The notes below the pieces were generated by a model that had not been told where the DNA came from, did not search any database, and saw nothing but the letters and a program-made list of their open reading frames with translations. DNA of 64,000 nt from Macrostomum lignano (taxonomy: Eukaryota). The position numbers and the translations under genes are program-made. The stretch spans positions 310,001-374,000 of the forward strand of contig NIVC01000894.1 of the NCBI GenBank assembly GCA_002269645.1, written 5' to 3'. Position 1 is the first letter of the stretch; the number at the start of each line of letters is the position of its first letter. This document shows, in pieces, positions 1,787-20,265 of this stretch.

Positions 1787-2727
1787 ATGTCTCCTCTTGG
1801 CAATCGCCCAGCAGTCTTGGCAGCTGCCTGCTGCTCTCTCCTGCTCGTCATTGGCGTCACCGCCGGTCGAGTCATTCAAGTCTCCTACATTGGCTGCTTC
1901 GAGGATAGCAGCACTAGGGACATGAGAGGCTTATCGGGAATCAAAAGCGTCGGCGAAATCTCCGTTTCGGAACCAAGAGTGATAAGCGGCAACATGACTC
2001 AGGACTTCTGCAGCGGCTTCTGTGCACTTGGCGGCTTCCCGTACTTCGGGTTGCAGAACGCATGGGCCTGTTTCTGCAGCTGGGACTTCGGCTCGCTAGG
2101 ACCTGGCAAGGAAAGCGACTGCAACATGCCTTGCAACGGAAACTCCAGCCAAATCTGTGGAGGCTTTTGGCGAAATTCGGTGTTCGCTCTGAAATACCCG
2201 AGTGAGTTTTCTTGCACTCAGATTGCACTCACTCAGAATTGATTGTCTATTTCTGGTAGACGCTCAAACAGTGAACTGATGAATTGGAGACGCAAGTACA
2301 TGACAACAAGACTTCAATGGCGATTGCAAGAAACTTGCAGTCTATCTGAGTCTGAGTTTATGATTGATGTTGTGAAGCCTAAACTTGGATTATACTTGAG
2401 CAGCTTTAAGAAACCGAACTCAAAATTCGGGACGTTACTGTTCAAGTGAGATGCTTCCTGCACTAAAACTAGCCCTTTTTGTTTACTTCAGAGCGGAGCT
2501 GCTTCAAGCAGTCGCAGATGCCCAGCCTCAACGTCTCGTCGACTCTGCCGACCTCCTGGAGCATCGCCGCCCAAACAGCTCTGGACTGCCTGATCCCGTG
2601 CGAGGCCTCAGCTGAGTGCCAGGCTGTGATTTCCTCTGGCCAGCAGCGCCTGTGCCACCTGCTGAGGTTCGCCTACCCGCCTGCCAGTCTGAGCAGCACC
2701 GACGGAGACTTTTTCCTGCGTGGATGA
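1787..2727 (+). CDS. Secreted WSC + PAN/apple-like protein, copy 1 (type A exon 1); join(1787..2201,2492..2727), 216 aa
   Basis: Hydrophobic signal peptide; WSC motif YIGCF..D..RD..MT..C..FC..YFGLQ..CFC..C..C.G...CGG.WRNSVF with 8 Cys. Donor GTGAGT at 2202, acceptor TTCAG ending 2491. 415+236 nt is in frame. Exon 2 has the C-x3-C...C...CxL pattern of PAN modules. Confidence 0.88.
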
Positions 2728-3331
2728 TTTTCTGACTGATTGACCGATTGGCATCGTTTATTAAGACTAGATTTTTAAAGAGAATCTGAAAATATATTTT
2801 CAACTTGAAAACAACAGAGAAAAGTCATGTTTTAAAGCTCATGAAAAAGTGCGTCAATATATCATTATCAATTGTGAAAAATTTGCGAATAATAACTGTG
2901 AGCGGCCCTCAATCCAGACGTTCATCAAAGAAGCTAGAAAGAAGGCAAGACAAAAGAGATGCTTTCAATTTTGAATAGCCGTCGAAGTGCTCTTGAAGTA
3001 TAGGTGTACAGGTGTACTTGAGTATGGGTGGACGTGACGAGGCGGATGACGAAGAGTTGATGGAGTTGATCCGATTCATTGAATGCGGTAACGATGATGC
3101 TCTGCCACCACTGCCAAGCGAAGAAGAGGCTTGCCCCGAGGATCCCATGCGGAACAAACCATGCAATTCGGCCGATGTGAGTGTAGTTATTGTCGATTCT
3201 AGCTCTACTCCTCGATTATTGCGGAACAATTGGTCCACGTTTCATTATACCCACGTTACGGCCGTTTTCATGCATGTATACAATCTGTTTATTCAGCTTT
3301 GTTGTATTGAATAAAAAATATCCTCGCAAAT

Positions 3332-3472
3332 GCATTGATACAGGAATATACAGATTGCTTATCTGCAAATGGGTATATCCAAATATAACCCGTTGGGAAT
3401 ATCCAAAGATGGGGGCGGCTTGACCATAGACTATTCGCAGATAAGCAATCTGTTGTATTCCTGTTTCGATGC
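3332..3472. repeat. Imperfect palindromic MITE-like hairpin
   Basis: gcattgatacaggaatatacagattgcttatctgc (from 3332) is the reverse complement, with few mismatches, of gcagataagcaatctgttgtattcctgtttcgatgc (ending 3472). Confidence 0.7.
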
Positions 3473-3984
3473 CTGAAAGGCGCGCAAAAATTTACTTAGT
3501 TCACAATTTCCGTCGATGCAATCGTTTGTGGCCCAAACGAAACTAGACACAATAAACTTATAACACGAGCTATATGTGATTAGCGAGGGCAGAAAAGAAG
3601 TGAAGGGCCTAAGCCGCGGGTTGAAGTTGTATTTATACTACGAGCTAACAATAATGAACAGGTTAGCTGAATAATTATCTATCATGAATTAACGGTTGAG
3701 GTTGTCTGTGGGGAAGCGCATGGTAGACGAAGGGAGACGGCTGACTGAAAAGTAAGAGGCTGATTTCCAAAACAGAAAGTACAAATATTTGGAGGATGGA
3801 AATCCGACATACGGGTTTATTCTTGAAGGTCTTTCGAACTAGGAAACGCGGAAAACGGTTGACTGAGCCAAGCCATGAGAGGGGCTGCATTTATAGAGAG
3901 AATCGATTGCACCACTTAACGAAAGACCCCCCGCTGAGAGTCACCTCTGACTCTGATGCTAATTTTAGCAACAAGCGAGCGGGT

Positions 3985-4435
3985 TCTGCTTCAGAGGAGG
4001 CATGGGTCCGGGCACACGTGATCTCCCCATAAACACGAGCCCAGCGTACAATGATGAAATCATTGCACTTTGGACTAAAGAAGGAAGAAGGCCCTGTCAT
4101 GTGACTGGCTCACATGACAAGGGGGAAAAGGCCCACAAGTGAAGGCACTCGTGACCTTGGAACCGGAACAGGACAGCACTCCAAATTTGGAGATGCCAAA
4201 CAGAGAACGAAACAGAGGCAGGCCAGACCAAGCTGTCTGGGCACTGCAAAACGGGAGCACAAGACAAAAGGGGGGGGGCAAACGAGGACAAACAGACAGA
4301 CAGGCAAACGGGCAAGGGACAGGCCAGAGGACAGGCGGGGACAGGCAACTGCCCAGCGGCAGACAGAAGCCTGGGGCGAGGGCGAGGGAACCAGCTGACT
4401 AGTGCGGCGCCTAACTAAACTAGCGACTCACTACA
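3985..4435 (-). mobile_element. Solo-LTR-like element (related to 9882-10217)
   Basis: Minus strand begins TGTAGTGAG. Shares tgcactttggact and gctgactag...cctaac blocks and a purine-rich core with 9882-10217. Left boundary approximate; no TSD found. Confidence 0.35.
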
Positions 4436-5374
4436 CTTTCTATTTGAATTTTCACAGTTTTCCTAGCCCTGATAAGAGACAGAATTAGTTGTACCAGCCT
4501 GACATTTAGCATGGCAGTAGATAATCTGATAAGATTTTCATCGTCTATTTAAATCCAGGCTCCGAACTCCAACAAAATGACTGGAAAATATTGGCCAAAC
4601 CGCCGCATCTACGAAAGTTTGTTTGCTTGAGTTTTTGCTAATTTGCAAAAAGAAAATTATTGCCATAAAACTACTTCACTCCTTCCTGTCAATCATTTAG
4701 CGAAGCTTTTAAGATGCGTTAAGGATTTAATTCTGTGCTCACTTGACTATAAGATTCGAAAAATATGTTCAACTCTTCTTACAGTCAGTGTATTTCTAGT
4801 CAGAGCTGCTTCAAACCGGAGAAAATGCGCTGTTTGCATCGCATCCTTGCACTCTCATCTATCAGTTGTCAGGGCTTCACCAGACTCAGCGAACAATAAA
4901 GCTGAGCAGCTGGCATAGCTCTCATCAAAGTGCACTAAAAATTGAACTCAAAAAAAATTTTTGCTGACTGATGGTAGCAAATAAGGGCTCTACTCTAGGT
5001 TATTTTGGTGTTAGAGGATTTGATCGAGTCTATGCCTAAGGCAGTTCCCAGCACTAGCACTTGCCCTGGAACTACCAGTAACAAGCAGGTGTAATTTGTC
5101 GGGGAAAAGCAGCTTCACCACTCAAAAAGATGACATCTTGCATGCGCGCCAACGCCAGTTGCGACTTGCTCAAGTCATGACCCGCCTCTGCCGTGAATTT
5201 TTGCCTTGCCTCTGCCCTACGTGCGACCTTTTCTTGGCTGTCAATTTGGAGTATAGTGGGCATCAAATGCTCCGATACGAGTGCACTACTTGGCTTATTT
5301 TTTAAAAGTATAGGGATTTATTTTTTGGCGTCAGATGACCTGTACAATATATTTTACGAAGTATTTGCAGTTTT

Positions 5375-6172
5375 TCAAACTGTCTTGCTTCGAGCAGACT
5401 CAGCCGCGAACAAAAAGTCTCCATCGGTGCTGCTCAGACTGGCAGGCGGGTAGGCGAACCTCAGCAGGTGGCACAGGCGCTGCTGGCCAGAGAAAATCAC
5501 AGCCTGGCAGTCAGCTGAGGCCTCGCACGGGATCAGGCAGTCCAGAGCTGTTTGGGCGGCGATGCTCCAGGAGGTCGGCAGGTTTGAGGCTGGGCATCTG
5601 CGACTGCTTGAAGCAGCTCCGCTCTGGAATAAAATGAAATTTGACGGCAGGACACCTGACAACAAAACATTTATGTCGATTTGTAGCTCAATATAATGGC
5701 TCGTATTAAATTTTTTAAAGCGTTGTCAGCCCATAGCAGCCCAAATCGATATTAAACACTCACTCGGGTAGGTCAGAGCGAACACCGAGTTGCGCCAATG
5801 GCCTCCGCACTCCTGCTTTGAGTTTCCCAAGCAAGAAAATTTGCAATCGGTTTCATTGGACTTTCCGAAATGGCCGTAGGACCTGCCGCAGAAGCACTGC
5901 CTTCTGTGCTGCACTCCAAAGTAGGGAAATCCTCCCAGAGAGCAGAAGCCACCGCAGAACTCGACAGTCATGTCTGACCTGCTTGTCAGCTTTTTTCTGG
6001 CGTCTACCGGTACAGAGCCGATTGTATCGATGCCTTCCAGCCCATTCAGATCCCTGTCTGAGAAGTCAACAAAGCAGCCAATGTAGGAAACTCGGAACAC
6101 TCTGGCACGGACTGCGCAACTCAGCAGGAGAGCAGAGCAGGAGATGAGCAAGCAATAGCTCTTCTGGAGCAT
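5375..6172 (-). pseudogene. WSC + PAN copy 2 (type B exon 1) with frameshifted exon 2; exons 6172..5764 and 5623..about 5390
   Basis: Intact signal peptide and WSC exon (409 nt, GTGAGT donor). Exon 2 has a net 11-nt deletion at about 5582 (CTCAA-AC-CTGCCG versus CTCAA-CGTCTCGTCGACT-CTGCCG), giving a premature TGA at 5513-5511. A second 1-nt indel lies near the normal stop. Confidence 0.8.
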
Positions 6173-6749
6173 TGCGAGTGACGGTTATCGAGAAGGTAAT
6201 TTGCGTTCTCCCCCTCTTTTTATACGCTTAGCCTCCAAAGACCAACGTGTAAGTGATTTTAAAAGTTATAAAACAGAAGTGTGATGAAAGCGTTAATACT
6301 GTTAGTAGCAATGCTAGCATACAGGATTTGTATCTCAGTATCACATCGGTCTCTATAACTTATTCAGCTAGCTAAATGGTGTTGGTCAGCATCTGCTTGA
6401 TTTGTGGGCTGCCATCGGAGGCGGCGGTGAACTCAACGGCTCAAAAGCAACACATAAGCAGTCAAATCATAGTTCGACTAGGTCTGATCATCTAATCCCT
6501 TATCAATGTGCTTGGCGGCAATCGTGCAGTTGCCGAGTACGCGGTCGTCTGCTCTGCAGTTCGAGCCGCAGTCAGTCCGAACCAGCAATTTTGTTCAAAA
6601 CAACAGACGATCGAGGCGACGGAGCTTTTGCGAGGCCAGCAGTTCTAATCTGTTTCTCGGCGCTCGCAATCAGCCTTTATTTGTATTGGCTCTCTTTGCT
6701 TCTTCATATTGAGCAGGGTTCGGCAATGCTTTTGCTTCAAGGGACAGAT

Positions 6750-6965
6750 AAAAAATCTAACTCATACTGCCGGGTCAGTTGAGCGAGGAAAGGAGAGAAG
6801 AGATCAAAGAGGGAGAAAGAAAAGAGGAGAAAAAAGATGAGAGGAGAGAGGAAAGAAGAGAGCTGAGAAGAGACAAAAACTTTGAGCAGACCGGATTGCC
6901 ATTGTGAAGTTTCAAAGGACCCGAGTGCCGCATGCATCCCATGGGCCAGAGTTTTGTCACCCCTG
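6750..6965 (-). mobile_element. hAT-like non-autonomous element end with CT-rich interior (second copy 33826-34045, +)
   Basis: Terminus CAGGGGTGACAAAAC..CCCATGGG..CATGCGGC..CTCGGGTCCTTTGAAAC is shared with TAGGGGTCGGAAAAC.. at 33826 and resembles hAT/Charlie termini. Only one end is visible. Confidence 0.45.
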
Positions 6966-7967
6966 ATAGGAGACTAAATTAGTTGTACCAGCCTGACATC
7001 TATAGCATGGCAGCAAATAATCTGATATAGTGTTCATCGTCTATTTAAATCCAGGCTTAAAACCGAATTCCGCCAAAACGAATGGAAAATAGTGGACAAA
7101 CCACCGCATCTATGAAATTTAGTGCTTGAGTTTTTTGCTACTTTGCAAAAAGAAAATTATGGCCAGAAAACTACTTCACTCCTTCCTGTCAATCATTCAG
7201 CAAGGCTTTTAAGCCGCGTTAAAGCTTTACTTCTGTGCTCACATGACTATAAGATTCGAAAAATATGTTGAACTCTTCTTACAGTCAGTATATTTCTATT
7301 CAGAGCTGCTTCAAACCTGAAACAATGCGCCGAATTTGCATCGCATCCTTGCAGTCTCATCTATCAGTTGTCAGGGCTTCACCAGACTCAGTGATAAATA
7401 AAGCGGAACAGCTTGCATGGTTCTCATCATAGCGCACTGCGCACTCAAAAGTGAACTCAAAAAAGTTTTTTGCTGACTTGATGGTAGCAGAAACAAGGGC
7501 TTTGCTCTTGAATGGCAGCTTCTTAAACAGAATAAAATCTTTGCTGTAGTGTTTTATGCCTTTCAATTCTTTTGATGTGGGAGAATTTGATTGAGTCCAT
7601 AACTATCACAATTCACAGCACTAGAAATTGTGCTCGAACAGCCACGAGAAAGTGTAGTTTTTCGGGGCAAACCAGTTTTACTACTCAAATAGATGACTGA
7701 CATCTTGTATGCGTGCCAACGCCAGTTGCGACTTGCTCAAGCCATGACCCGCCTCTGCGCTTGAACTTTTGTCCTCGCCCTGCCCCACATGCGACCCTTT
7801 CTTGGCTGTCAGTTTGGAGTTAAGTGGGAATCAAATGCTCCAATACGAAGTCGCAAAGTCCCAAATTCCCCAAAGAGGTGTACAGGGATTCTTTTTTCTT
7901 AGTGTCAGATGAGCAGTACAATAAATGTCATTCAAAGTTTTCTTGAACATTCGTGCTTCCAGCAGAC

Positions 7968-10786
7968 TCAGCCGCGAACGAAGTAGTCTCCATCGGTGCT
8001 GCTCAGACTGGCAGGCGGGTAGGCGAACCTCAGTAGGTGGCACAGGCGCTGCTGGCCAGAGAAAATCACAGCCTGGCAGTCAGCTGAGGCCTCGCACGGG
8101 ATCAGGCAGTCCAGAGCTGTTTGGGCGGCGATGCTCCAGGAGGTCGGCAGAGTCGACAAGACGTTGAGGCTGGGCATCTGCGACTGCTTGAAGCAGCTCC
8201 GCTCTGAAGCAAACAAACGTAGTTAAATTTAGTTAAAAATCTACCTCCAACGTTGAAGTCGGTTTCTAAAGCTACTCAATTAGGTCTCAGTATTCGGTGA
8301 AGCGAGGATCCCGTTGGAACAAAATAGGCAAGGCGAGCGGACACAGCACTTCGTGCAAATTTACGACTCCAACAACTAATCAGCAGATCCTTGCCGGGCT
8401 CAGTGGGACGACTAAGGATTGCATTGTTAGTCTCAAAGCAGACTCAATGGTCTCGTGGGCAGTGTTGGGCAAGTTACTCAAAAAAAGTAACTTGCGTTAC
8501 TGTAACTTAAGTTACCACTTTTTAAAAAGTAACTTACGTTAGCCTAGTAACTTTGAACAAAAACCCGGTAACTTTTAAGTTACTTCCGTTACTTACTTCC
8601 GTTACCTATGTTATAAACAAAATTTTCTGCTTTTTTAACATTGCAAATGTGCTGGAACAGCACAAATGATCGCGAAAGCCAGAAGGAAAAATACAACAAA
8701 ATTAATTTCAGTAACTGTATTAAATTTTAATCACTTTAGGCCCTTTCCGTAAAAAGAAGAGAAGCTGAAGGTCAGAAACGTTAAAGGCAAAACGCAATTT
8801 AATTTGTAATAACATTATAAGTTATAATACACAAGGACAACTTAACGTAACTTCAGTTGTCCTTGATAATACATCGCTCGTAATAAGTACCTGGCTTTAC
8901 TCCACTCTACAGTCTGCTTTACTAGTCTTTTTATTTTCAATTATTTGAAATTTTTTTCAATTTTTTCAATTATTTTTCAATTCATTAATATTAAATTATT
9001 GTGCAGTGCAGTGCAGTGCCAGTGGACTTTAGTGGTGTAGCCAGGGAGGCCGCCTTAACAATCGTTGGGGCGGCAACTTCACCCCACCTGCAAGACACCC
9101 CACCAGGGGGGGTGGGGTTGGGCGTGGCGGGTGCATGAGGCATGGCCAGCCAGGCCAACCCGCCCCCCCCCCAATTAAAATTCCTGGCTACGTCGATCAC
9201 TGAGTGGATTTGTGGAGACTACAGATGAATTTCTTTCTTTGGTTGTTTGTTTCTAAGAACTAAACAAAATATTTTTATTAACTTAAAAACGAAAAGCAAA
9301 AATATTTTACCGAAAATAACAAAGTAAAAACATGTTTCAAGTATTTCTTTATTAATTACAGCGTAATACCGTATGATATTATTCACTTAGTTTTGAATTT
9401 AAGAATGAAAAATGCTAAAAATGTGACAACTGGCGTAATAGCTAAGCATATCAGTTTTAAATTTAAATATTGCGATTGTTGCAAAGTAACTGTAACGGAC
9501 TTCCGAAATTTGAGTAACTTACCGTTACTCCGTTACCAAAATAGGAAAGTAACTTGCGTAAGGAACGCTTTACGAAAAAGTAACTTGCGTTACCATTTAC
9601 AAGTTACTCGGTAACGGAAGTGCCCAACACTGCTCGTGGGTTTAGGATGAAAAATGATTCAGAACAATGTTATTGTCAGAAATTGAGGCACATTACGAAA
9701 CTGAGAGAGTTTGGAGACTTGGAAAATTTGAAGCTGTGACAGAAACACGGCTGAGGGGTCCATACTTAAAGCCTTACTTAAATAACCACATTGCGCCAGA
9801 GCAAACAAGATATTGCGTGATGCGGTGTCTATGCGACGTAAATTTTTAACTAAGTCTTTTCCACTGTGGTCTTTTCTGAGCTGCTAGTGAGGCAAAGGTG
9901 CCGGGCAAGTGAGTTTAGTCGTAAGCATGGACCAATCTGTGCAGTATAGTATAGGTGTTAACTGCACTTTGGACTCCAAGAAAACAGAACGGAAAAGGCG
10001 AGCCGCTGCACGCAGAACGAAGAGAACAGAAAAAGAAAGAAAGCAACAGCAAAAGAAAACGAACACAGGCCAAGCTGCTCAGTGGCTGCAAAACAGAACG
10101 AAGAGCGGATGGGGCAAGCAGGGAGGAGGCAGACAGAAAAGCGGAGCCGTGCCCAGCGTCAATGGAAGCTGCTGACTAGGGGGAGACACCTAACAGTTAA
10201 TCTAGTGTCTTACTACAAATTTAATATTCAAATAAGGCCTAAACAGTAACTGATAATTGTTGTATATTTTAATGAACTCATGTTTCCAATTCATCACTTG
10301 ACTGCTTGAGTGGTTACAAGTAATGGGACACCAATTCTGACTAAGTGCAATCTGAGTGCATGCAAACTCACTCGGGTGGGTCAGAGCGAACACCGAATTT
10401 CGCCAAGGGCCTCCACACATCTGGCTTGAGTTTCCGTTGCAAGTCATGTTGCAGTCGCTTTCTTCGGCAGGTGTTAGTGAGCCGAAGTCCCAGCTGCAGA
10501 AACAGGCCTTTGCGTTCTGCAACCCGAAGTACAGGAAGCCGCCAAGTGCGCAGAAGCTGCTGCAGAACTCCCGACTCGTGCTGCGGCTTATTACTCTTGG
10601 ATCCGAAACGGAGATTTCACCGACGCTTTTGATTCCCGATAAGCCTCTCATGTCCCTGGCGCTGTTGTCCATGAAGCAGCCAATGTAGGAGACTTGAATG
10701 ACTCGACCAGCGGTGACGCCAATGACCAGCAGGAGAGAGCAGCAGGCTGCTGCCAAGACTGCCGGGCGACTGCTAAGAGGAGACAT
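7968..10786 (-). CDS. WSC + PAN copy 3 (type A); join(10786..10372,8203..7968), 216 aa, intron expanded by insertions
   Basis: Exon 1 is 415 nt with GTGAGT donor at 10371; exon 2 is 236 nt after a TTCAG acceptor. Both exons are intact and in phase. The 2168-bp intron contains a hAT MITE and an LTR-like insert. Confidence 0.82.
8460..9632. mobile_element. Non-autonomous hAT DNA transposon, 1173 bp
   Basis: TIRs CAGTGTTGGGCA / TGCCCAACACTG; perfect 8-bp TSD CTCGTGGG at 8452-8459 and 9633-9640; subterminal GTAAC/GTTAC repeats at both ends. Confidence 0.92.
9030..9202. mobile_element. Small MITE nested in the hAT element
   Basis: tagtggtgtagccaggga ... ttcctggctacgtcgatcactg imperfect inverted ends; a similar gtgtagccagga start occurs at about 36468. 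Confidence 0.4.
9882..10217 (-). mobile_element. Solo-LTR-like insertion in the intron of copy 3
   Basis: Begins TGTAGTAAG exactly where homology to the copy 4 intron stops, and ends CTCACTAGCA. No TSD seen. Confidence 0.4.
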
Positions 10787-12606
10787 CTTGGTCTCTTCGT
10801 CTCTTAGTTTGTTCGTCTCTTAGTTTAGAGCTAGAAATCTTTCGTCACCGCTTTTATATACTACAGACGTATAGGCTTTTTGGGCGCGAATCAAACTTTT
10901 TATTGACTTCCTTCATCTACTGCTGCTTTGAGTAGTGCTGACTGCGTGTCCAACTCTAAATTGCGATCGCCGGTGTTCGAAGGCTATTCCATTTCCTAGG
11001 GTATTTTCTAAGAAGAAAGTCGTCTGATGATGGCCTATCATTGCATTTCGTTAGCGGGTGGTTCAAAATACGAAAAGGCACTTTGGTCAGGCGAGCTTAT
11101 TTTGAAATATAAATTGGGGGATTTTAATCATTAAGTGGCGTACCATAATACACTGGAGGGGCGTCATATTGAGAAAACTTAGTCCGGTGAGGATTTTGAG
11201 GACCTTTTTTAGGGCAAAGGAAGAGTCGCGCCATATTCGCCAGCCACAAGGGAGGGGCGGCTGGCCGATCTGACAGCTGCTACACCAATGAAGTACCTGT
11301 ATCCAGGATCCTTAACCTGACGCTGTCTTCCTCTATAAGTTTAATTAATAACCTTGATATATTTTTTGGATTGGAAATCGGTCTATTTCTATCGATGCGT
11401 TCCATATGCTAGAGTCCTGCGAGAATCAAGCTGACTAAACTAGATTTTTCTCTCTTAATTCAACCGACCGTTGCGTGCCAGTGGGGACGATTACATAAAC
11501 ATAGAGGACTCATTCGGCGCCTAATTCTTCACGGTGAAGTCCCAGATCAGTCTTGAGACACTTAAAGGTGACGACATATCACATCATAGATCGGCATTAA
11601 ATCTGGTTTTTGTAAGCGGATGAAGTGCTGACTAATACACGGATTGGCATTATTTTTAAAAAAAATTAGATTCTTTAGAGAATGTAAAAACATGTTTTAA
11701 GCTTGAAAACAACGTGGCTTCACTTTATGGGGCTATCTGTGTGATAATTATGGAATAATTCATGATTATTGAATCACTTGTTTTAGAGAAAAGTTTTAAT
11801 ACTTTTTTATAGTTCTAATAATTTTCATAGCTATTTTTAATACGTTAAAAAGCACCTGAAAATCAATATAGGTGAGCCGGCTATCTAAAGTCAAAATAGA
11901 CAATATTCGGCGAAGTAGATGAAATTGCATTGCCACTGTTTAAGTTTGTCCGCTCCAGTGAAGCATAACAAAATATAGACATTCATTTTAGTACGAGCTT
12001 ATGTGAAGCACAAAAATGGAACCCAATACTGAATTACGCTATGCAAAGTTTTAGTTCCAGCAGTGTTTGTCATCCACAATTAGCAAACTATGGAATGGGA
12101 GGCCACGGTTTTTCTTGAAATTCCGTATCTTAAGAGGCATATTATTGAGTAGTAACTTTACAAGTACGAAACTTACGACCCGACGTACTGTATAGCACCA
12201 AAGTTTTTTATTTGAATTGTTGGGCTACGAATGGATGCCTAAAATTTAATCCACGGCATGGCCGAGCCAAAAAAAGACAAAAATTAAATCGACTGGGCCA
12301 TTAAATTTATTTTTGAATTATCCAGGCCATAAATTTTTGGTGCAAAATTAAAAGATGACAACTTATTTCTCAAATTTTATTTTAACGCGTCTGCTGACAC
12401 TAGGGCAAAAAGACAGAGCTGTTTTATAATAACAGCAACAAAACCGCAAAGTTAAATTAATTTTAACACTTAATGGCAAATTAAAACTTTTGAGTTAAGG
12501 AAACACAACTTTGTTGCTTGCTCCATCGGCTTCAATCCTCATTTTCTTACCTCTTGGTTCACCAGCCATCTCCTGAATGACCATAGCGACCCGAACAGTC
12601 TGCTGA

Positions 12607-12855
12607 TCACCGGGAGCCTCTCGTCATTTCTTCGTAGTCCCTGAGCACCATTAAACCGGAAGCTTTACTACGAGCCCAGGCAGCTTTCTTGACTTCGTGC
12701 CACGCCGTTAAAACAGTCATGCCCCAATCGGCCTTTTTTCTCGTCGTCACAGGTGCACTCTCCAGCATTACTCGGTTTATCGCTTCATTTGACATACATG
12801 GTAATACCGGATCTGGCTTCTTTGGTCTTCTCCAGTCAGATCTGCTCGGCCACAT
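12607..12855 (-). mobile_element. Possible Crypton/DUF3504-like N-terminal fragment
   Basis: SAPVTTRKKADWGMTVLTAW fits the P..T.....W.......W pattern upstream of the Crypton recombinase core. Lies in a segment absent from the paralogous copy 1 upstream region. Confidence 0.35.
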
Positions 12856-13332
12856 GAAAAGATTGTGCTGAGACGCCGGCTTGTCGTTCTAAAAAGAAGC
12901 TGAAGAACTCATCCAGTGAAATTGTTTCCCATGTTTACTTTGGTCACAAATGCTTGGGTGTGATCAACTTCTAGCGTGAGATCTTTGTATTTATCAGTCG
13001 ACAGATATTTGTGGGCTGGGGTAATGCTTATTATATAATGCTTAATGCTTGTGCTTAGGTTTAGCTTCAAGTTAATAACAAGTGCAAAAATATTTATCAA
13101 TGAAATATTTCTGGTTAGGCGCGTACTTCGAATACACCCAATGACAATTTCAATTTGGACACGCGATCAGCACTACTCAGAGCAGTAGTAGATGAAGGAA
13201 TTTAAGAAAAGGGTTTGATTCACGCCCAAAAGCAGCGTATCAGGTTGTAGTATATAAATCAGTGACGAAAGAGTTCTCTGCTCTAGAAGAAGAGACCAAG
13301 ATGTCTTCTCTTGGCTATCGCCGAGCAATCTT

Positions 13333-13462
13333 TGCAGGGGACCTGGCGGGGACCGGCCGCACCCCCAAGGTTAATCCTTGTGCTCTTTTACCTGGGGTTG
13401 CTGTAGGGGCCTCGCGGCCTATTCGCGGCGCCTGCGCCCCCCGTCAGTAGTAAGTAAGTAAG
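13333..13462 (+). mobile_element. 130-bp GC-rich retroposon 3' end with (AGTA)n tail, flanked by a 217-bp direct duplication
   Basis: Insert ends ...ccgtcagtagtaagtaagtaag. Flanks 13116-13332 and 13463-13679 are equal-length repeats with roughly ten substitutions. Confidence 0.65.
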
Positions 13463-13647
13463 TAGGCGCGTACTTCGAATACACCCAATGACAATTTCAA
13501 TTTGAAAACGCGATCAGCACTACTCAGAGCAGTAGTAGATGAAGGAATTCAAGAAAAATGTTTGATTCACGCCCAAAAGCAGCGTATCAAGCTGTAGTAT
13601 ATAAATCAGTGACGAAAGAGTTCTCTGCTCTAGAAGAAGAGACCAAG

Positions 13648-14702
13648 ATGTCTCTTCTTGGCTATCGCCAAGCAATCTTGGCAGCTGCCTGCTGCTCTCT
13701 CCTGCTCGTCATTGACGTCACCGCTGGTCGAGCCATTCAAGTCTCCTACATTGGCTGCTTCATGGACAACAGCGCCAGGGACATGAGAGGCTTATCGAGA
13801 ATTGAAAGCGTAGGCGAAATCTCCGTTTCAACCTCATTTGTATCGAGCGGCAGCATGAGTTGGGACTTCTGCAGCAGCTTCTGCGCACTTGGCGGCTTCC
13901 CGTACTTCGGGTTGCAGTACACATGGGCCTGTTTCTGCAGCTGGGACTTCGGCTCGCTGGGACCTGCCAAGGAAAGCGACTGCAACATGCCTTGTAACGG
14001 AAACTCCAGCCAGATCTGCGGAGGCCTTTGGCGAAATTCGGTGTTCGCTCTGACCTACCCGAGTGAGTTTTCTTGCACTTAGATTTTACTCAATCAGAAT
14101 TGGTGGCTCAATTCTTGTAGCCGCTCAAGCAGTCAAGTGATGAATTGAAACGCGAGTTCATCACAGCAAGACATCAGCGATCAGTTACTGTTTAGCCCTT
14201 GAAATATTACATGCGATTTCTCGAGTCAGGAACTGAACGGCAAATGTCCTAATCGGACCTTCGGACTTTCGCTGAAAAATGAAAATGTTCGGCTAAAATT
14301 GTTGAAACTTTCTGTTTAACTGAGTCTGAGTTTATGCTTGATGTCTTGAAGCCTATACTTGGATTATATTCTAGAAGCTTTCAAAAAACTGAACTCAAGA
14401 TGCGGGACGCTACTGTTCAAGTGAGATGCTTCCTGCACTAAAATTAGCCATGTTTGTTTGCTTCAGAGCGGAGCTGCTTCAAGCAGTCGCAGATGCCCAG
14501 CCTCACGGTCTCGTCGACCCTGCCGATCTCCTGGAGCATCGCCGCCCAAACAGCTCTGGACTGCCTGATCCCGTGCGAGGCCTCAGCTGACTGCCAGGCT
14601 GTGATTTTCTCTGGCCAGCAGCGCCTGTGCCACCTGCTGAGGTTCGCCTACCCGCCTGCCAGTCTGAGCAGCACCGATGGAGACTACTTCGTGCGTGGAT
14701 GA
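13648..14702 (+). CDS. WSC + PAN copy 4 (type A); join(13648..14062,14467..14702), 216 aa
   Basis: ATG 13648 after a TATA box; donor GTGAGT at 14063; acceptor TTCAG ending 14466; 415+236 nt in frame; all Cys retained. Confidence 0.88.
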
Positions 14703-16107
14703 ATTGCTGACTGATTGACCGATTGGCATCGTTTATCAAAACCGGATTTTTATAGAGAATCTGAAAACATATATTTAGCTTGAAAACAATGGAGCTTCAC
14801 TTTATAGAGAAATCTGTGCTAGCATCAATTTATTGAATAATTTGTTTTGAAGAGAAAAGTAATGTTTTAACTAATTAATACATGAAAAAGACTGTAGTCG
14901 TTTTATTGTTAGCTCTCAGTGATGCATTCGAATTTGAACAGCCTAAGAATTTCCCACTATTAGAGATGTCGGATCTTACAGCTGCATGTTAAGGATTAAT
15001 TTGTGTAGAATAGTACCTTAATCTGCTGGATTGAACCGACATTCACAGAGTGGGATTGTGTACGACTAGCTTAATCGATACGCAAGGAGATTCAACAATA
15101 TTTTTCTATCGTAGGTTCAGAAACCATCTCCGTCTCTAGTTCGTGCGTGTACTTTGTGCAGCCTGGCTGTCTGTATCAGGATGCCAGTATTAAAGAGAAT
15201 CAGTTGCAGCTGTGTTTGCGCGGCTCCCGCTATCATTTTGATTGCCAGTGGGAACAGGTGTGATGCAATTGTTTTTAGTCCCAACAGGGTTTGGCATCCA
15301 GTATCAGCAAACTGTGGAAAGACAGGCCTCCGATTTTATTGACAGGTATTCATTTTACTTAAGAGACCCATTGAGTAGAAACTGTAGTGGGAGGTGTGCT
15401 AGCTAATTATTTTGACTACCCACTGTATCGCATCTCCAGTTCTCAATATGCTCAGCAATCCTACATGTAGCTCCCAAACTGCATCGGGAGTAGGGAGCTA
15501 TTCAACTTAGCACAGCTGTTCCATTGCGACTTCTTGTCTGCCAATCTTCATTTAACTTTAGGAATTTTGTGCATTTGTGTTGCAAACATCAATACCTTAA
15601 CTTACCAATAGTTTAAAGCAAAAAATGTATTGGCGGTTTGTATTTTCTTGTTAAATGCGCAACTGGTGAGACACCGGATGAGCTACTTTTAGTAGTAGAA
15701 CCTACAGTAAGTATAGTTTGTCTTCTCTCATTAACACTAATGTACCTGACTCATCTGGGAAGAATTTCGCATTCTGAAAAGATTAAAGCTTTTCTATGAT
15801 GCGTGGGTTTTTTAGAAAAAGCTGGGGGCATGTGTCTTGCAGCGCTGTTTTTCCCAGCGGCCGTTTCTGCGTTTTTGCTGGTGAATTCACCCGTGACGGC
15901 TTGAGCTTCTTCTCGGTTTTTTGAATACGCCTAAAAGAGCCTTTACAATTTTTCCAGTTTTTTCTGCTCAGCAAGGAAACTTGCTCTACTGTCTACTCTG
16001 CAATGTGGATGGCGCCAAAAGAGGTGGTGTAGTGAGAATGACAATTGTAGTTGAGCCTCTCATGCTGACAAGCGCTTGCTTCCATCGATCGGCACCCAAA
16101 CCTCTGA

Positions 16108-16218
<111 letters not shown>

Positions 16219-16783
16219 GGCTTCTTACCTCTGCCCATTGATGTTCACTGGCGTTTTTTATTTCCATGTCCAGAACCAAGGTCGCATCGACATAGAACCA
16301 CTTTTCGGGTATATTCATTAGTCGGCTTCTCACCTTAATAATTATACTCCTTCGCACTTTTTGCTTTGATGAAGAATTTCATATTCGAAATATCGGCAAC
16401 TAGCACTTCTTAGCTTTTTTGTTTGTCTTGTTGCTTTGCTGTGTCAGCGCCCTCGGGATTGGAGGCTCTCCCTCTCTCTCCCTCTCTCCCTCTCTCTCTC
16501 TGGCTTCTTACCTCTGCCCATTGATGCTCACTAGTCGTTTTTTATTTCCATTTCCGGAACCAAGGTCGCATCGACATAGAACATAGACGAAACCGGAATT
16601 GGACACGCAAGGGACAAAACAAAATCTGAAAAAGCAGCATACGATGTCATACTTAAACGACACTCAAATTAAGTACAACATTACCTACACTCAATAAAAA
16701 CAGAAACGTAATGAAGGGCTATCATGGGTTCAGACCAATTTGCGTATAGTTTGTAGTGCCACAAAGCACAGATGTCATAAAAC

Positions 16784-17740
16784 TCATTCTTTCGGCTGAA
16801 TAATAAACGTGCAGCTTGTGAATTGGCATCCTGAGAACTTGGACCCATCCATGCTGGACCTGGCATGACCGACAATTGAACTGTCACTGAATGAAACCTG
16901 GCGCTGAGGATCTTCCACTAGTAGAGATGGCGACTGTGTTAACTGACTGACACTCACTGCATTCTGTACAGACTGACTGTCTGGTACCAAGCTGGTGCTC
17001 AACTGTGATGCCGGAACAATGCGAAGTGCATCCTGCACGGCCATCGAAGCGCGATACAGGCTTGGATCCCTCTGAACCCTCAGGTAGCCGCGCACACTCT
17101 TTTCACACTTGTGTCCCGTCACGGACATGATGTCACTGACACTGGTAGCCAAGCGCATGCAGGTCGCAAATTCTTGTCAACCTGTGAGAAAAATACATGT
17201 ACGCTCGTAAATGAAGCATAAATGAAATGAAATTAAATGAAACATGAACTCACTGCCTAAAATTAATCACAGCCAGGTAAATTAAACGTTAATAATTACA
17301 GGATACAGTGGTTCGTGTATTGCTTGTGCAATCCAGCCTTCGCACTCATGGTTTTCATGAAATTGTTCCAATAATTCGTCCCACGATTGACCAGCACAGA
17401 AAATCCCTTTCCCTCGAGCGGTCTCGGGAAAAACTGTTATCCTTGGTAGCAGCCGGAATGGCGTCCTTGTACCGCTTCAGAATTCCGACATCGCACATAC
17501 GGACTTGCTTGTAATCAGAGGTAGCACCGCGCTTCAGAGGAAATCGACCACGACGGCAGATGAGGCAGGTAGCATACTCACGGCCCTCACTGTCGCGACC
17601 AAAAAGAATTCCGTCTCTCTTCATCAGTTGTTTCACATGTTCCTGCCCACGTTCTCCAAATTTATACATGAGGGTAAAAAGATCTCATCTTGAAGACACC
17701 CAGTAAATAGCGTTTATTTGCATCAGCTTCTTCTGTTCCC
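16784..17740 (-). mobile_element. Degenerate Crypton-type tyrosine recombinase gene (intron-containing, frameshifted)
   Basis: Pieces in order: TGCLQDEIF/FTLMYKFGERGQEHVKQL; FMKTMSAKAGLHKQYTNHCI; GT-AG intron 17299..17182; LLTRICDLHALGY; VSDIMSVTGHKCEKSVRGY. These match the YR motifs FG.RG.E, YTNH..R and TGH.....Y. The box II Arg reads as Leu and several frameshifts are present. Confidence 0.75.
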
Positions 17741-19388
17741 CAGTTGTCTTTCTTTTTATCGTGTGCCCTTGTTTTCTCTGCTGAGCGAGTGCCCTCTGCC
17801 TGTTGCATCAGTGATGCAGAAAAAGTCTGACAAAAACTTGGCCATCGCCCTTTTTACCAGCACTCAATGTGATTCGTGCTCTTCTCGTGAATGTCGTTTT
17901 AACGTTTCACATTCTCGTTTTTGACTCATCCCACATCAGAACGAACAGCTCTGCTGTCATGAAGGTGCGCTCCATCTGACAGACTGCAGATATGACTGCG
18001 TTATTGGGTATTATCGATCAGGCTTCCTGTTCCACCTTGCCGATTCATCAGGTTTAAGAGGGGCGTCTCGTCCAAACCATCGCCTTTCAACGCCTGCTGA
18101 CACTTCTCGCACTTGTACGCGCGGATTAGGATAGCTTGCAAAGCAGCCAGCCCTAATATAGGCGCGCTTCTCGTTCTGAATGTTTATTGACTACTTAAGT
18201 CTCACGGTTAGACGGAAATAGATAAAATCGGGTGTCGTCAAGAGGGCACTTGTAAGGCATAGTTGGGGCATCCAGATGCTGCGCACTGAAGTCTTGATTT
18301 AATAGAGAAAATCTCAACTCGAATTGGCAGCCTCGATGAGCATACATTTGCTGCTCATATTGTCTATCACCAAATGGTGCAGTTGTCTTTTAGAGCCGCC
18401 AATAATTTTTACTCACAATCCATCATTTTCACAATGTACCCCGTGGTTTTGAGTCGAAATAGAAATTTAACCATTTTTGCTTTCAATGGAAATTATTGAA
18501 TGCGTGGTGGAACTCAAAGAGCTGCAGTGATATGCCAGTCGTCTTTCTTGCATACCAAAGCGCAAAATTTCTAAATTGAGAATCCGGATTGGCAGAAAAG
18601 AAGACGTGTTAAGTATACTGTGCTCAGCTGAATAGCTTCCCAAATGAGAGGTAGTTAAAATATGAACTTGCACATCTTCCACTTGAGTTTCTCCTCAACG
18701 TGTCTAAAAATGAATGCTTATCAGGAAAAACAAAGGCCTGATTCTCAATAGTTTCCTAGTGTTGGATGGCAACCACTGTTGGGACTAAAAACAATTGCAT
18801 AGACTTGGATATTCCCACTGGCAATTAGCATTCTAGCATGAGCCGCGCGAACACAGATGCTTCTGATTCTCTTCAGCACTGGCAAATTTAATGCAGACAG
18901 ACAAGCTGCACAAAGCACCTGCTCGCGCTCTATAGGGAGACGGCTTCTCAACCTACTGTACCGATTTTGCGTGTAAATAGCGCAACTTCCAACACTTAGT
19001 ATCCTGGTGTATCGGTTGAGCCAGTCACACACAATCTCACTCTGCGAATGCCCTTTCCATCCAAAGGAACTTATGACGGCTGACGAACTGTCACTCAGTA
19101 TATTTTAGGCTGAAAATCGCGAAATGAAGTATACTCTACACGCCAATTAGGCTTAACATACAGCTATGAAGTTCTTACATTTCTAATAATCACCAAATTG
19201 TTTTCTGAATTAATTTTTTATTTCTCTTTAATTTTATAATCTATTTATTCTACTTGATTGCAGAACAGTTAGCCACAACAAGCAAAGCCACTAAATTTCT
19301 ACGCTCGTATAGTTTAAAATATGTTTAAAGCTTGTCTAAGAAAATCCGGTTTTGATAAGTGATGTCAATCGGTCAATCAGTCAGCACT

Positions 19389-20265
19389 TCATCCACGCAC
19401 GAAGTAGTCTCCATCGGTGATACTCAGACTGGCAGGCGGGTAGGCGAACCTCAACAGGTGGCACAGGCGCTGCTGGCCAGAGAAAATCACAGCCTGGCAG
19501 TCAGCTGAAGCCTCGCACGGGATCAGGCAGTCCAGAGCTGTTTGAGCGGCGATGCTCCAGGAGGTCGGTAGAGTCGACGAAACGTTGAGGCTGGGCATCT
19601 GCGACTGCTTGAAGCAGCGCCGCTCTGGAATAAAATGAATGTTGACAGCAGGACACGTGACAACAAAGTATTTATGTCAATGCATAGATCTACCTTTCTA
19701 AAGAGAATAATTTTTCTGAATGCAGAGGCAGTTTTAAATTTTACACAAGAGGCAGTTTTTTGTCCAATTTAATGTTAGATCATTTAAAAAGGAACATGAA
19801 ACATTGGTTTACAGTCAACCTTTATCAACCCTAGATGACATCCATTGGACACTCACTAGGATAGGTCAGAGAGAACACCGAGTTGCGCCAACGGCCTCCG
19901 CACACCTGACTCGAGTTTCCCGAGCAAGGATAATTGCAATCGGCTTCATTAGATATTCCGAAACGACCGTAGGAACTGCCGCAAAAGCACTGCATCTTGT
20001 CCTGCACTCCAAAGTACGGGAAGCCTCCCAGAGAGCAGAAGCCACCGCAGAACTCGACAGTCATGTTCGAGTTTTCTGTGCGCTGATTGCCAACGGCAAA
20101 AACACCGACTCTGTCGATTCCCGTCAGCCCATTCAGGTCCCTGTCAGACTCGTCAACAAAGCAGCCAATGTAGGAAACTTGGAACTCTCTGCCACGGACC
20201 GCACAGGTCAGCAGGAGAGCAGAGCAGGCGATGAGCAGGGAGTAGCGAGTGCTCAGACAAGGCAT
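19389..20265 (-). CDS. WSC + PAN copy 5 (type B); join(20265..19857,19624..19389), 214 aa
   Basis: ATG 20265 downstream of TATAAAA; 409-nt exon 1 with GTGAGT donor; acceptor TTCCAG; 236-nt exon 2 intact. Confidence 0.88.

What the first reader, a model, noticed from the sequence alone, without database searches (positions are those of the whole stretch)
1787..20265. Modular WSC-PAN cluster: all four 5'-module x 3'-flank combinations, as predicted by inversions through a shared inverted exon 2
Seen: copies 1, 3 and 4 share promoter/exon 1/intron type A; copies 2 and 5 share type B. Independently, copies 1, 4 and 5 share 3' flank X (..CGTGGATGA..GCTGACTGATTGACCGATTGG) and copies 2 and 3 share flank Y (..CGCGGCTGAGTCTGCT.., about 1 kb, 4460-5390 versus 6965-7965). 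So 1=A-X, 2=B-Y, 3=A-Y, 4=A-X, 5=B-X, with the switch inside the 236-bp exon 2. Copies 1/2 and 4/5 are convergent, so their exon 2 sequences form inverted repeats. Inference: crossover between them flips the spacer and swaps A-X/B-Y for A-Y/B-X, a shufflon-like geometry that reassorts and homogenises a constant exon behind variable exons. Whether this is ancient, polymorphic or somatic cannot be seen here.
Basis: partly seen in the sequence, partly recalled or inferred. Interest (0 to 1): 0.85.

Follow-up and report, generated by a model that had tools for sequence, protein, structure and literature searches.

The report
Recombined flatworm WSC gene cluster
Five neighbouring copies of a small secreted-protein gene in the flatworm Macrostomum lignano share a nearly identical second exon, and old recombination inside that exon has re-paired their front halves and tails: a clear case of ordinary gene-family evolution, not a programmed switch.

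Summary
Window 1.8-20.3 kb carries five two-exon paralogues for about 215-aa WSC + PAN-like secreted proteins of Macrostomum lignano. Exon 1 and the intron end come in two types: A in copies 1, 3 and 4, B in copies 2 and 5. The 3' flanks come in two unrelated types: X in 1, 4 and 5, Y in 2 and 3. All four combinations occur. The A/B signal stops 3 nt before exon 2, and the X/Y signal starts 9 nt before the end of the stop codon. The 227 nt between carry almost only private substitutions.

At least one homologous exchange inside exon 2 is required. However, copies 3 and 5 lie on the same strand, so they cannot be the two products of one inversion. Only an exchange of copy 2 with copy 1 or copy 4 removes the conflict. 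Copy 2 x copy 4, flipping 5624-14466, fits best, with parents A-Y and B-X. A paralogous locus shows a B-X gene in copy 2's upstream context.

Exon 2 is homogenised by gene conversion, and its core also across unlinked loci. Such a swap changes only the 3' flank, not the protein. Module divergence of 12-33% points to old events. No recombinase was found. This is ordinary non-allelic homologous recombination (NAHR) and concerted evolution.

The parts
1787..2201 (+). Copy 1, exon 1 (type A): signal peptide and WSC domain
   Evidence: WSC PF01822 at E=1e-15.
2492..2727 (+). Copy 1, exon 2 (constant, PAN-like), 236 nt
2728..2815 (+). Flank X1. Its homology to c4 and c5 ends here.
   Evidence: 88% to X4, 78% to X5.
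1033..1384 (+). Distal upstream block shared by c1 and c4 (also at 11898-12243)
   Evidence: 73% over 369 nt.
4453..5399 (-). Flank Y2 of copy 2
   Evidence: It is mosaic: the proximal 420 nt are about 78% identical to Y3, the distal part 85-93%.
5400..5623 (-). Copy 2, exon 2, 224 nt, with an 11-nt and a 1-nt deletion
   Evidence: UniRef A0A1I8HUC0 models an acceptor 7 nt downstream.
5764..6172 (-). Copy 2, exon 1 (type B). The body belongs to an older B lineage; the first ~22-27 nt and the upstream region match the L004 B gene.
6947..7967 (-). Flank Y3 of copy 3
7968..8203 (-). Copy 3, exon 2
8460..9632 (.). Non-autonomous element in copy 3's intron. It has 13-nt terminal inverted repeats (CAGTGTTGGGCA...) and an 8-bp target-site duplication, CTCGTGGG. 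The site is empty in L004.
10372..10786 (-). Copy 3, exon 1 (type A)
11609..11794 (+). Relic of an X-type 3' end and flank upstream of copy 4
   Evidence: 71-77% to 14688-14860.
13116..13337 (+). Partial duplicate of copy 4's promoter and its first 37 coding nt
   Evidence: D10: 95%.
13648..14062 (+). Copy 4, exon 1 (type A)
   Evidence: exact match to A0A1I8IZP2.
14467..14702 (+). Copy 4, exon 2
   Evidence: a 158-nt perfect run shared with copy 2.
14703..15578 (+). Flank X4-long, mirrored by copy 5's flank
   Evidence: collinear blocks at 86, 79, 74 and 74%.
18554..19388 (-). Flank X5-long of copy 5
   Evidence: 85% to the flank of the L004 B gene.
19389..19624 (-). Copy 5, exon 2 (8 private substitutions)
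19857..20265 (-). Copy 5, exon 1 (type B)
5624..14466 (.). Segment proposed to have been inverted by a crossover between exon 2 of copy 2 and exon 2 of copy 4. This is an inference.

Best explanation
**Shown.**
- The region is a cluster of five paralogous two-exon genes of Macrostomum lignano.
- Each gene has its own TATA promoter, an exon 1 encoding a signal peptide and a WSC domain, a phase-1 intron, and an exon 2 encoding a cysteine-rich PAN/Apple-like C-terminal domain.
- Exon 1 evolves fast and falls into two old lineages, A and B.
- Exon 2 is kept nearly identical in all copies.
- The 3' flanks are of two unrelated kinds, X and Y. They are not congruent with the 5' lineages.

**Inferred.**
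- Exon 2 is homogenised by ectopic gene conversion. Its tracts are confined by the loss of homology at the acceptor site and 9 nt before the end of the stop codon.
- The same 236-nt homology has served as the substrate for non-allelic homologous recombination (NAHR).
- The most economical single event is a reciprocal crossover between exon 2 of copy 2 (- strand) and exon 2 of copy 4 (+ strand). It would have inverted 5624-14466.
- That event would turn an A-Y gene and a B-X gene into today's A-X (c4) and B-Y (c2).
- Before it, the locus would have held two whole-gene inverted duplicates: A-Y with A-Y head to head, and B-X with B-X tail to tail.
- Copy 1 would be a later copy of c4.
- Further junctions at exon-1 position ~27 and inside flank Y show the locus is a patchwork of several such events.

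**Conclusion.** The layout is a fossil of ordinary recombination among paralogues, not a programmed switch. An exchange within exon 2 re-pairs a gene with another 3' UTR and flank but leaves the protein unchanged.
For: **Organism and genes.**
- c4 matches a public M. lignano protein exactly. c2 and c5 match public entries over 147-149 aa.
- WSC scores E=1e-15 to 5e-17.

**Modules and sharp boundaries.**

**Concerted evolution of exon 2.**
- Between A and B, synonymous divergence (pS) is 0.54-0.65 in exon 1 but 0.11-0.18 in exon 2.
- Against C-type paralogues on other contigs, pS is 0.6-0.7 in exon 1 and 0.44-0.65 in the 5' half of exon 2. In the 117-nt core it is only 0.07-0.34, with pN at most 0.06.
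- Distant family members have a normally diverged core, so this is not an absolute constraint.

**Inversion logic.** Only c1xc2 or c2xc4 remove the four-combination conflict.

**Points favouring c2xc4.**
- The flanks of c4 and c5 are collinear mirror images for about 880 nt at 74-86%. This matches the B2-B5 age (pS 0.31-0.33). It is far too similar for an A-B pair (pS about 0.6).
- c2's exon-1 body and X4-long are both the outlier relative to c5 and the L004 locus. B2-L4B pS is 0.33 against B5-L4B 0.16. X4 is 76% to the L004 flank against 85% for X5.
- A3-A4 identity (82%) is close to Y2-Y3 identity (76-85%).
- c2 and c4 share the longest perfect exon-2 run, 158 nt, against 71 nt for c1/c2 and 54 nt for c4/c5.
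- In L004 the B gene that has copy 2's upstream context (Y3-like flank, then u2) carries an X-long flank, not Y.
- The c1/c2 spacer has no homology to any X-long flank, which argues against c1xc2.

**No machinery found.** The spacer ORFs have no Pfam hit and no homologues.
Against: - The A modules form an unresolved trichotomy (61/57/42 odd sites; rooted 4/4/4). So the order 'A3/A4 split, then inversion, then c4 copied to c1' cannot be verified.
- Flank Y is itself mosaic, so age-class arguments are blurred by later conversion.
- L004 shares with today's window the order and orientation B, then centre, then the A3 5' module. A window-specific inversion of c3 does not predict this. L004 must in any case have rearranged on its own.
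- Exon-2 variants give no residual linkage to either parent.
- No allelic or orthologous copy of this locus could be retrieved, so no alternative orientation has been seen.
- Non-reciprocal routes cannot be excluded.
- The PAN assignment is borderline: 20.9 and 13 bits against a 21.4 cut-off. The structure model was unusable, with pLDDT 42.
Confidence: 0.6

Rival explanations
1. The convergent pairs 1/2 and 4/5 are invertible units. Crossovers between their exon 2 copies flip the spacers and convert A-X/B-Y into A-Y/B-X. The system reassorts modules in the manner of a shufflon and may still be active.
For: - Pairs 1/2 and 4/5 are convergent inverted repeats of 94-96% identity.
- Undoing a c1xc2 inversion does reduce four combinations to three.
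Against: - c3 (A-Y) and c5 (B-X) are on the same strand and are not a convergent pair, so they cannot be the products of one inversion.
- A c4xc5 inversion changes no combination.
- A c1xc2 pre-state leaves two things unexplained: the c4-c5 mirrored flank, and a 'B-X' gene whose distal flank (2816-4452) matches no X-long flank.
- The perfect identity runs are short, 71 and 54 nt.
- Each exon 2 has private substitutions.
- The swap does not change any protein.
- No recombinase was found.
Confidence: 0.1
2. There was no inversion. The mosaics arose from non-reciprocal events whose junctions lie in exon 2. Candidates are partial segmental duplications, one-ended gene conversion or replication template switching that copied 'exon 2 + flank' onto another gene, and unequal crossing-over between direct copies (c2, c3 and c5, or c1 and c4).
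For: - Exon 2 is clearly subject to gene conversion.
- The locus has other junctions outside exon 2. These are exon-1 position ~27, about +424 in flank Y, the X relic at 11609, and a promoter duplication.
- Family clusters elsewhere are mostly direct tandem arrays.
- The L004 layout fits a tandem A-Y then B-X unit.
Against: - This route needs several independent events that each end inside the same 227 nt.
- Unequal crossing-over puts the reciprocal products on different chromatids. Here both recombinant classes sit in cis, on opposite strands, flanking one segment.
- It does not by itself explain why the divergence patterns pair c2's exon-1 body with c4's flank.
Confidence: 0.25
3. The mosaic is an assembly or haplotype/homoeologue chimera. 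M. lignano is a recent polyploid with a very repetitive genome.
For: - A paralogous locus, 84-89% identical to pieces of this one, exists.
- No reads could be checked here.
Against: - The modules within the window differ by 10-40%. The shared repeat is only 236 nt, which is trivial for long reads to span.
- The exon 1 to exon 2 linkages of c2, c4 and c5, including their private variants and copy 2's deletions, recur in public M. lignano protein models.
- The flank junctions fall at the same nucleotide in independent copies.
Confidence: 0.05

Closest known systems
Inversions by non-allelic homologous recombination between inverted paralogous repeats, such as human F8 int22h, IDS/IDSP1 and FLNA-EMD (cited from my own knowledge, not tested here)
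   Same: - Inverted repeats of high identity lie on one chromosome.
- A crossover flips the intervening DNA and swaps what lies beyond each repeat.
- Gene conversion between the arms goes along with it.
   Different: - Here the repeat is a 236-nt coding exon of a gene family, not a multi-kb duplicon.
- The event is inferred from a fossil pattern and is old.
- No polymorphism has been observed.
- The exchange is silent at the protein level.
Segment-limited concerted evolution in multigene families, such as RHD/RHCE, MHC and KIR domain exchange, and arm-to-arm conversion in Y-chromosome palindromes (cited from my own knowledge)
   Same: - One part of the gene is homogenised among paralogues, at synonymous sites too, while the rest diverges.
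- Shared variants are distributed in patches.
   Different: - The homogenised part is the C-terminal exon, with boundaries sharp to a few nucleotides.
- Its 117-nt core is shared even by paralogues on other contigs.
Bacterial shufflons (R64 Rci recombinase, sfx sites, pilV)
   Same: Inverted repeats lie within coding DNA, so an inversion re-pairs gene segments.
   Different: - A shufflon has a dedicated tyrosine recombinase and 19-bp crossover sites.
- It has one promoter and one constant 5' segment fused to alternative 3' segments.
- Its inversion changes the protein and is frequent.
- None of these features is met here.
WSC-domain secreted proteins of M. lignano that are proposed as prostate or seminal-fluid candidates (Mlig-pro46; RNA815_80.4; PMC6953679, PMC4490696)
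   Same: - The species is the same.
- They are secreted proteins with WSC domains.
- The WSC part evolves fast (pN/pS 0.5-0.66 here).
   Different: - The Mlig-pro46 and Mlig-pro63 primers are absent from the window and from the fetched loci.
- The expression site of these five genes is unknown.

Membership tests
WSC domain proteins (PF01822) | Match to the WSC profile above the gathering score | tested here: met
   58.1 and 62.4 bits against a cut-off of 27.8, residues 32-126, full profile.
PAN/Apple domain (PF00024) | Match to the PAN_1 profile above the gathering score, or a PAN fold | tested here: inconclusive
   One search gives 20.9 bits (c5) and 13 bits (c1) against a cut-off of 21.4. 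Precomputed PF00024 hits exist on four relatives, and two carry a UniProt 'Apple' name. The AlphaFold model had pLDDT 42, so no fold search was run.
Shufflon / site-specific invertible multi-segment system | A dedicated site-specific recombinase encoded at or near the locus | tested here: not met
   The spacer ORFs 16784-18141 have no Pfam hit and no homologues. A tyrosine-recombinase-like motif seen by eye was not confirmed. The ORFs are broken by stops and frameshifts.
Shufflon / site-specific invertible multi-segment system | Inversion fuses one constant expressed segment to alternative coding segments, which changes the protein | tested here: not met
   Every copy has its own promoter, ATG and full ORF. 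Downstream of any exon-2 crossover the coding sequence is the same. Only three synonymous codon differences and the 3' flank differ.
Shufflon / site-specific invertible multi-segment system | Coexisting orientations within a population or clone | not testable with these tools
   No reads or second haplotype of this locus could be obtained.
NAHR-mediated inversion | High-identity inverted repeats bounding the segment | tested here: met
   Exon 2 of c2 and c4 is 96.9% identical with a 158-nt perfect run. The two copies lie on opposite strands.
NAHR-mediated inversion | Reciprocal junction products whose two sides trace to different parents | tested here: inconclusive
   c2 is a B body joined to Y, and c4 is an A module joined to a B-lineage X-long flank. 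The divergence classes match across the proposed parents. The L004 B gene with copy 2's upstream context carries X. Against this, the A tree is unresolved, Y is mosaic, and one L004 adjacency disagrees.
NAHR-mediated inversion | The uninverted arrangement seen in another haplotype or species | not testable with these tools
   Only a rearranged paralogous locus (L004) was retrievable.
Concerted evolution by gene conversion | A paralogous segment far more similar at synonymous sites than the adjoining coding sequence | tested here: met
   between A and B, pS is 0.54-0.65 in exon 1 against 0.11-0.18 in exon 2. The core against unlinked C-type copies gives 0.07-0.34, against 0.44-0.7 elsewhere.
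Concerted evolution by gene conversion | Species-specific homogenisation: paralogues within a species are more alike than orthologues between species | not testable with these tools
   No DNA from another Macrostomum species was available. Distant family members have a normally diverged core.

The most novel reading that the evidence does not exclude
The 236-nt constant exon, and especially its sharply bounded 117-nt core that is shared even by unlinked paralogues, may be a recurrent recombination hotspot in Macrostomum. In that case the inversions it mediates (2728-5399, 14703-19388, 5624-14466) would still segregate, or recur, in M. lignano. They would repeatedly re-pair fast-evolving WSC genes with alternative 3' UTRs and regulatory flanks. 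The cluster would then be a natural system in which exon-anchored structural variation tunes the expression of secreted, possibly reproductive, proteins.
Probability: 0.1. Interest if true: 0.6.

Novelty: new member of a known kind. Interest (0 to 1): 0.3.

Why it matters
- It is a clean, nucleotide-resolved example of one short exon serving two roles. The exon is the tract of concerted evolution, and it is also the substrate for structural rearrangement in a gene cluster.
- The breakpoints are confined to a 227-nt interval.
- The reconstruction is testable: one 8.8-kb inversion, with parents A-Y and B-X.
- For M. lignano, a regeneration and sexual-selection model with a duplicated and unstable genome, it flags a family of small secreted WSC/PAN-like genes. 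Their N-terminal domain evolves fast and their C-terminal domain is held constant.
- It also warns annotators. Copy 2 needs a shifted acceptor, and one public gene model at a related locus joins exons 15 kb apart.
- It does not reveal a new mechanism.

Tried and rejected
1. **Recombinase in the 4/5 spacer.** ORFs at 16784-18141 (- strand) contain a 'SVTGHKCEKSVRGYL' motif that looked by eye like a Crypton or tyrosine recombinase. A stitched translation gave no Pfam hit and no homologues. The reading frame is broken. Dropped.
2. **Transposon ends as flank boundaries.** I asked whether a shared transposon end explains the flank boundaries (4380-4452 against 10170-10233). The similarity is only weak in a pairwise alignment and not significant in BLAST. 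Left as unproven.
3. **Flanks as dispersed repeats.** Flank Y and its 210-nt sub-block (743-955) have no copies in the other 43 kb of the window or in 77 kb of other family loci.
4. **PAN fold by structure prediction.** The model had pLDDT 42, so no fold search was run.
5. **Retrieving the same locus from other assemblies.** Spliced proteins were not accepted. UniRef-only proteins and exon-1 ORFs are not on record. Only the paralogous locus L004 was obtained, via PAA93485.1.
6. **Identity with Mlig-pro46 or Mlig-pro63.** The published primers are absent.
7. **RNA-level explanation for the invariant core.** There is no Rfam hit. Folding z-scores are -0.19 and +1.0.
8. **Searching with the exon-2 peptide alone.** No hits. 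This probably reflects a limit of the word index.
9. **Rooted tree of the three A modules**, to order the events. It is an unresolved trichotomy.
10. **All six possible exon-2 inversions** were enumerated. c1xc3, c1xc5, c3xc4 and c4xc5 were rejected because they leave four combinations.

Full report
**What is there**

The window is eukaryotic. Self-comparison of 1-21 kb and translation give five two-exon genes:

| Copy | Strand | Exon 1 | Exon 2 |
|---|---|---|---|
| c1 | + | 1787-2201 | 2492-2727 |
| c2 | - | 6172-5764 | 5623-5400 |
| c3 | - | 10786-10372 | 8203-7968 |
| c4 | + | 13648-14062 | 14467-14702 |
| c5 | - | 20265-19857 | 19624-19389 |

All five have GTGAGT donors, CAG acceptors and a phase-1 intron. 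c1, c3, c4 and c5 encode intact proteins of 214-216 aa.

Exon 1 encodes a hydrophobic N-terminus and a WSC domain (PF01822, E=1e-15 to 5e-17). Exon 2 encodes a cysteine-rich domain that scores just under the PAN_1 cut-off (20.9 and 13 bits against 21.4).

The organism is Macrostomum lignano. The c4 protein is identical to UniRef A0A1I8IZP2. The C-terminal 147 aa of c5 equal A0A1I8G3G0. c2 equals A0A1I8HUC0.

c2's exon 2 has an 11-nt and a 1-nt deletion. With the canonical acceptor it hits stop codons. The UniRef model restores the frame with an AG 7 nt downstream, so whether c2 is functional remains open.

**Check of the observation**

Pairwise identities confirm the two classifications:
- Exon 1 is 88-90% identical within A (c1, c3, c4), 81% within B (c2, c5) and 61-64% between A and B.
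- Exon 2 is 94-98% identical in every pair.
- Flank Y (4453-5399 against 6947-7967) is 76-85% identical.
- Flank X (the first 74-88 nt) is 88% for c1-c4, 86% for c4-c5 and 78% for c1-c5.

The site-by-site table is the clearest result:
- Intron positions -29 to -3 split {c1,c3,c4} from {c2,c5}.
- Exon-2 positions 1-227 carry almost only private changes. c5 has 8, c1 has 5, c4 has 3, c3 has 2, and c2 has 2 plus its indels. The two informative sites follow neither classification.
- From position 228, 9 nt before the end of the stop codon, the split becomes {c1,c4,c5} against {c2,c3}.

Caveats:
- The B promoters are alignable only at a TATA box, and the B introns only in their last 57 nt.
- c3's 2.17-kb intron is type A only at its ends. 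It contains a 1173-bp terminal-inverted-repeat element with an 8-bp target duplication.
- The X flank shared with c1 is under 90 nt.

**Exon 2 is homogenised, and not only here**

Synonymous divergence (pS) between A and B is 0.54-0.65 in exon 1 but 0.11-0.18 in exon 2. Protein-level selection cannot produce that difference, so exon 2 evolves in concert.

I fetched three other family loci from assembly GCA_002269645.1 (L001-L003). Their 'C-type' genes are about 70% identical to A and B in exon 1 and in the first 105 nt of exon 2. The last ~117-130 nt of exon 2 are nearly invariant. Core pS is 0.07-0.34, against 0.44-0.7 elsewhere, and core pN is at most 0.06.

Three results rule out other explanations for the invariant core:
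- It has no Rfam match.
- It has no unusual RNA fold.
- In more distant family members with the same architecture it is ordinarily diverged.

The conservation therefore reflects recent homogenisation within this subfamily together with protein constraint. It is not an absolute sequence requirement, and it is not produced by the local inverted pairs.

**What the four combinations imply**

Both reciprocal classes occur on one chromosome, and exon 2 is the only homology joining 5' modules to flanks. At least one homologous exchange inside exon 2 is therefore required.

I enumerated every inversion possible between oppositely oriented exon 2 copies. Only c1xc2 or c2xc4 reduce four combinations to three. 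c4xc5, c3xc4, c1xc3 and c1xc5 do not.

One inversion cannot give this, because c3 and c5 lie on the same strand and are not a convergent pair. The workable reading is the reverse: A-Y and B-X are the parents, and B-Y (c2) together with an A-X copy are the products.

**Which exchange**

Several results favour c2xc4, which would have flipped 5624-14466:

1. The flanks of c4 and c5 are collinear mirror images for about 880 nt, not just 80 nt. The blocks are 86, 79, 74 and 74% identical. That divergence matches B2-B5 (exon-1 pS 0.31-0.33). It is far too low for an A-B pair (pS about 0.6). So c4's flank looks like the flank of a B gene.
2. A paralogous locus was obtained through PAA93485.1 (L004, NIVC01000027.1:703018-723908). 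It contains, in order:
   - a Y3-like flank;
   - the sequence that lies upstream of c2;
   - a B gene;
   - exon 2;
   - an X-long flank;
   - the c4/c5 spacer sequence.

   In that locus, the B gene that has c2's upstream context carries X, not Y.
3. Relative to c5 and L004, both c2's exon-1 body and c4's X-long flank are the older outlier. B2-L4B pS is 0.33 against 0.16 for B5-L4B. X4 is 76% identical to the L004 flank against 85% for X5. This is consistent with the two having once formed one gene.
4. A3-A4 identity (82%) is close to Y2-Y3 identity (76-85%), as expected if A4-Y2 and A3-Y3 were whole-gene inverted duplicates.
5. c2 and c4 share the longest perfect exon-2 run, 158 nt. c1/c2 share 71 nt and c4/c5 share 54 nt.
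6. The alternative c1xc2 would make 2816-4452 the distal flank of a B-X gene. That spacer matches no X-long flank.

Undoing c2xc4 gives this arrangement:
- c1 as A-X (+);
- [Y2-E-A4] (-) head to head with [A3-E-Y3] (+);
- [B2-E-X4] (+) tail to tail with [X5-E-B5] (-).

That is two whole-gene inverted duplicates in place of four partial ones. c1 shares with c4 a distal upstream block, the promoter, the gene and 88 nt of X, at 86-91% identity. It would be a later copy of the post-inversion c4.

**Limits of that reconstruction**

- The three A modules form an unresolved trichotomy, so the order of events is untested.
- c2 is also chimeric at its 5' end. The upstream region and the first ~22-27 coding nt are about 88% identical to L004, while the body belongs to the older lineage. 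c5 shows the reverse pattern. This second reciprocal-looking junction pair suggests another exchange between the two B genes.
- Flank Y is mosaic. In the proximal 420 nt Y2 is the outlier, and in the distal part Y2 and Y3 are the closest pair.
- L004 shares with today's window the order and orientation 'B, then spacer, then A3 5' module'. The model does not predict this. L004 has, however, clearly rearranged on its own: its A3-like module has no exon 2 after it, and its Y-like flank has none before it.
- Later gene conversion blurs all age estimates.

I put about 0.4 on the specific c2xc4 inversion. I put about 0.6 on the overall picture: old NAHR and conversion using exon 2, with at least one inversion likely and no programmed system.

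**Why it is not shufflon-like in function**

- Each copy has its own promoter and a complete reading frame.
- A crossover in exon 2 leaves the protein unchanged. It swaps only three synonymous codon differences and the 3' flank.
- No recombinase or short crossover sites were found.
- The modules are 12-33% diverged and every exon 2 has private substitutions. Frequent ongoing conversion would have erased those. These measures do not date a crossover, so current or somatic switching is untested rather than excluded.

**Biology**

Exon 1 has pN/pS of 0.5-0.66, against very low pN in the exon-2 core. The genes thus pair a fast-evolving WSC domain with a constant C-terminal domain.

WSC-domain proteins are recurrent among M. 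lignano prostate and seminal-fluid candidates (PMC6953679, PMC4490696). These five genes are not Mlig-pro46 or Mlig-pro63, because the published primers are absent. Their expression site is unknown.

**Verdict**

This is a new example of known processes.

Noticed in passing
window 2598-2715, 14573-14690 and the equivalent part of each exon 2; L001:10570-10687, L002:10584-10701, L003:20897-21014: The last ~117-130 nt of exon 2 are nearly invariant at nucleotide level across A, B and C-type paralogues on four contigs. The boundaries are sharp on both sides, while the rest of the genes are about 70% identical. There is no Rfam hit and no unusual RNA fold.
   Followed up: partly
window 5400-5623: Copy 2's exon 2 has an 11-nt and a 1-nt deletion. 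The frame is rescued only by an acceptor 7 nt downstream and gives a changed, extended C-terminus, as modelled in UniRef A0A1I8HUC0. It may be a pseudogene or a variant.
   Followed up: partly
window 6146-6172 and 20239-20265, against L004:9878-10030: There is a second pair of reciprocal-looking junctions at about exon-1 position 27. Copy 2 has the L004-like upstream region and start but an older exon-1 body. Copy 5 has the L004-like body, intron and flank but an unrelated upstream region and first ~27 nt.
   Followed up: partly
window 8460-9632 (target-site duplications at 8452-8459 and 9633-9640); L004:15073: A 1173-bp non-autonomous element lies in copy 3's intron. It has terminal inverted repeats (CAGTGTTGGGCA), GTAAC-rich subterminal repeats and an 8-bp target-site duplication, CTCGTGGG, which is hAT-like. 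The paralogous site in L004 is empty.
   Followed up: yes
window 20980-26074: A 5.1-kb satellite of a 13-bp unit (GCAGTTGCCTAGA, about 407 copies) lies directly upstream of copy 5. Further minisatellites lie at 27913-28468 (21 bp), 29256-29858 (22 bp) and 30469-30960 (30 bp).
   Followed up: no
window 13116-13462: Copy 4's promoter and first 37 coding nt are duplicated in tandem (222 nt, 95%). A 125-nt GC-rich insert separates the two copies, which leaves a decoy start upstream of the real gene.
   Followed up: no
window 11609-11794: A relic of an X-type gene end and flank (71-77%) sits upstream of copy 4 with no exon 2 before it. Its breakpoint lies at the same place near the stop codon where the X and Y types diverge.
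   Followed up: partly
window 743-955: A 210-nt block upstream of copy 1 is 75-78% identical to an internal part of flank Y (4585-4796 and 7098-7296), in the same orientation. It is not found elsewhere in the window or in the other loci.
   Followed up: partly
window 16108-16218 and 16784-18141: The c4/c5 spacer holds a (TC)55 microsatellite. It also holds degenerate ORFs on the - strand that are broken by stops and frameshifts. They have no Pfam hit and no homologues, and are possibly a decayed mobile element.
   Followed up: yes
L003:10001-25784: The public gene model for PAA protein P0014 joins an exon 1 at 10001 to an exon 2 15 kb away. It skips a perfectly good exon 2 at 10475-10710 and two further gene copies. 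This is probably a mis-annotation caused by the repeated exon.
   Followed up: no
L004:4651-5885: The paralogous locus also has a diverged family member on the opposite strand. Its exon-2 core relic is at 4651-4757 and its exon-1 relic, 69% identical, at 5680-5885. The locus is bounded by two tetraspanin genes.
   Followed up: no
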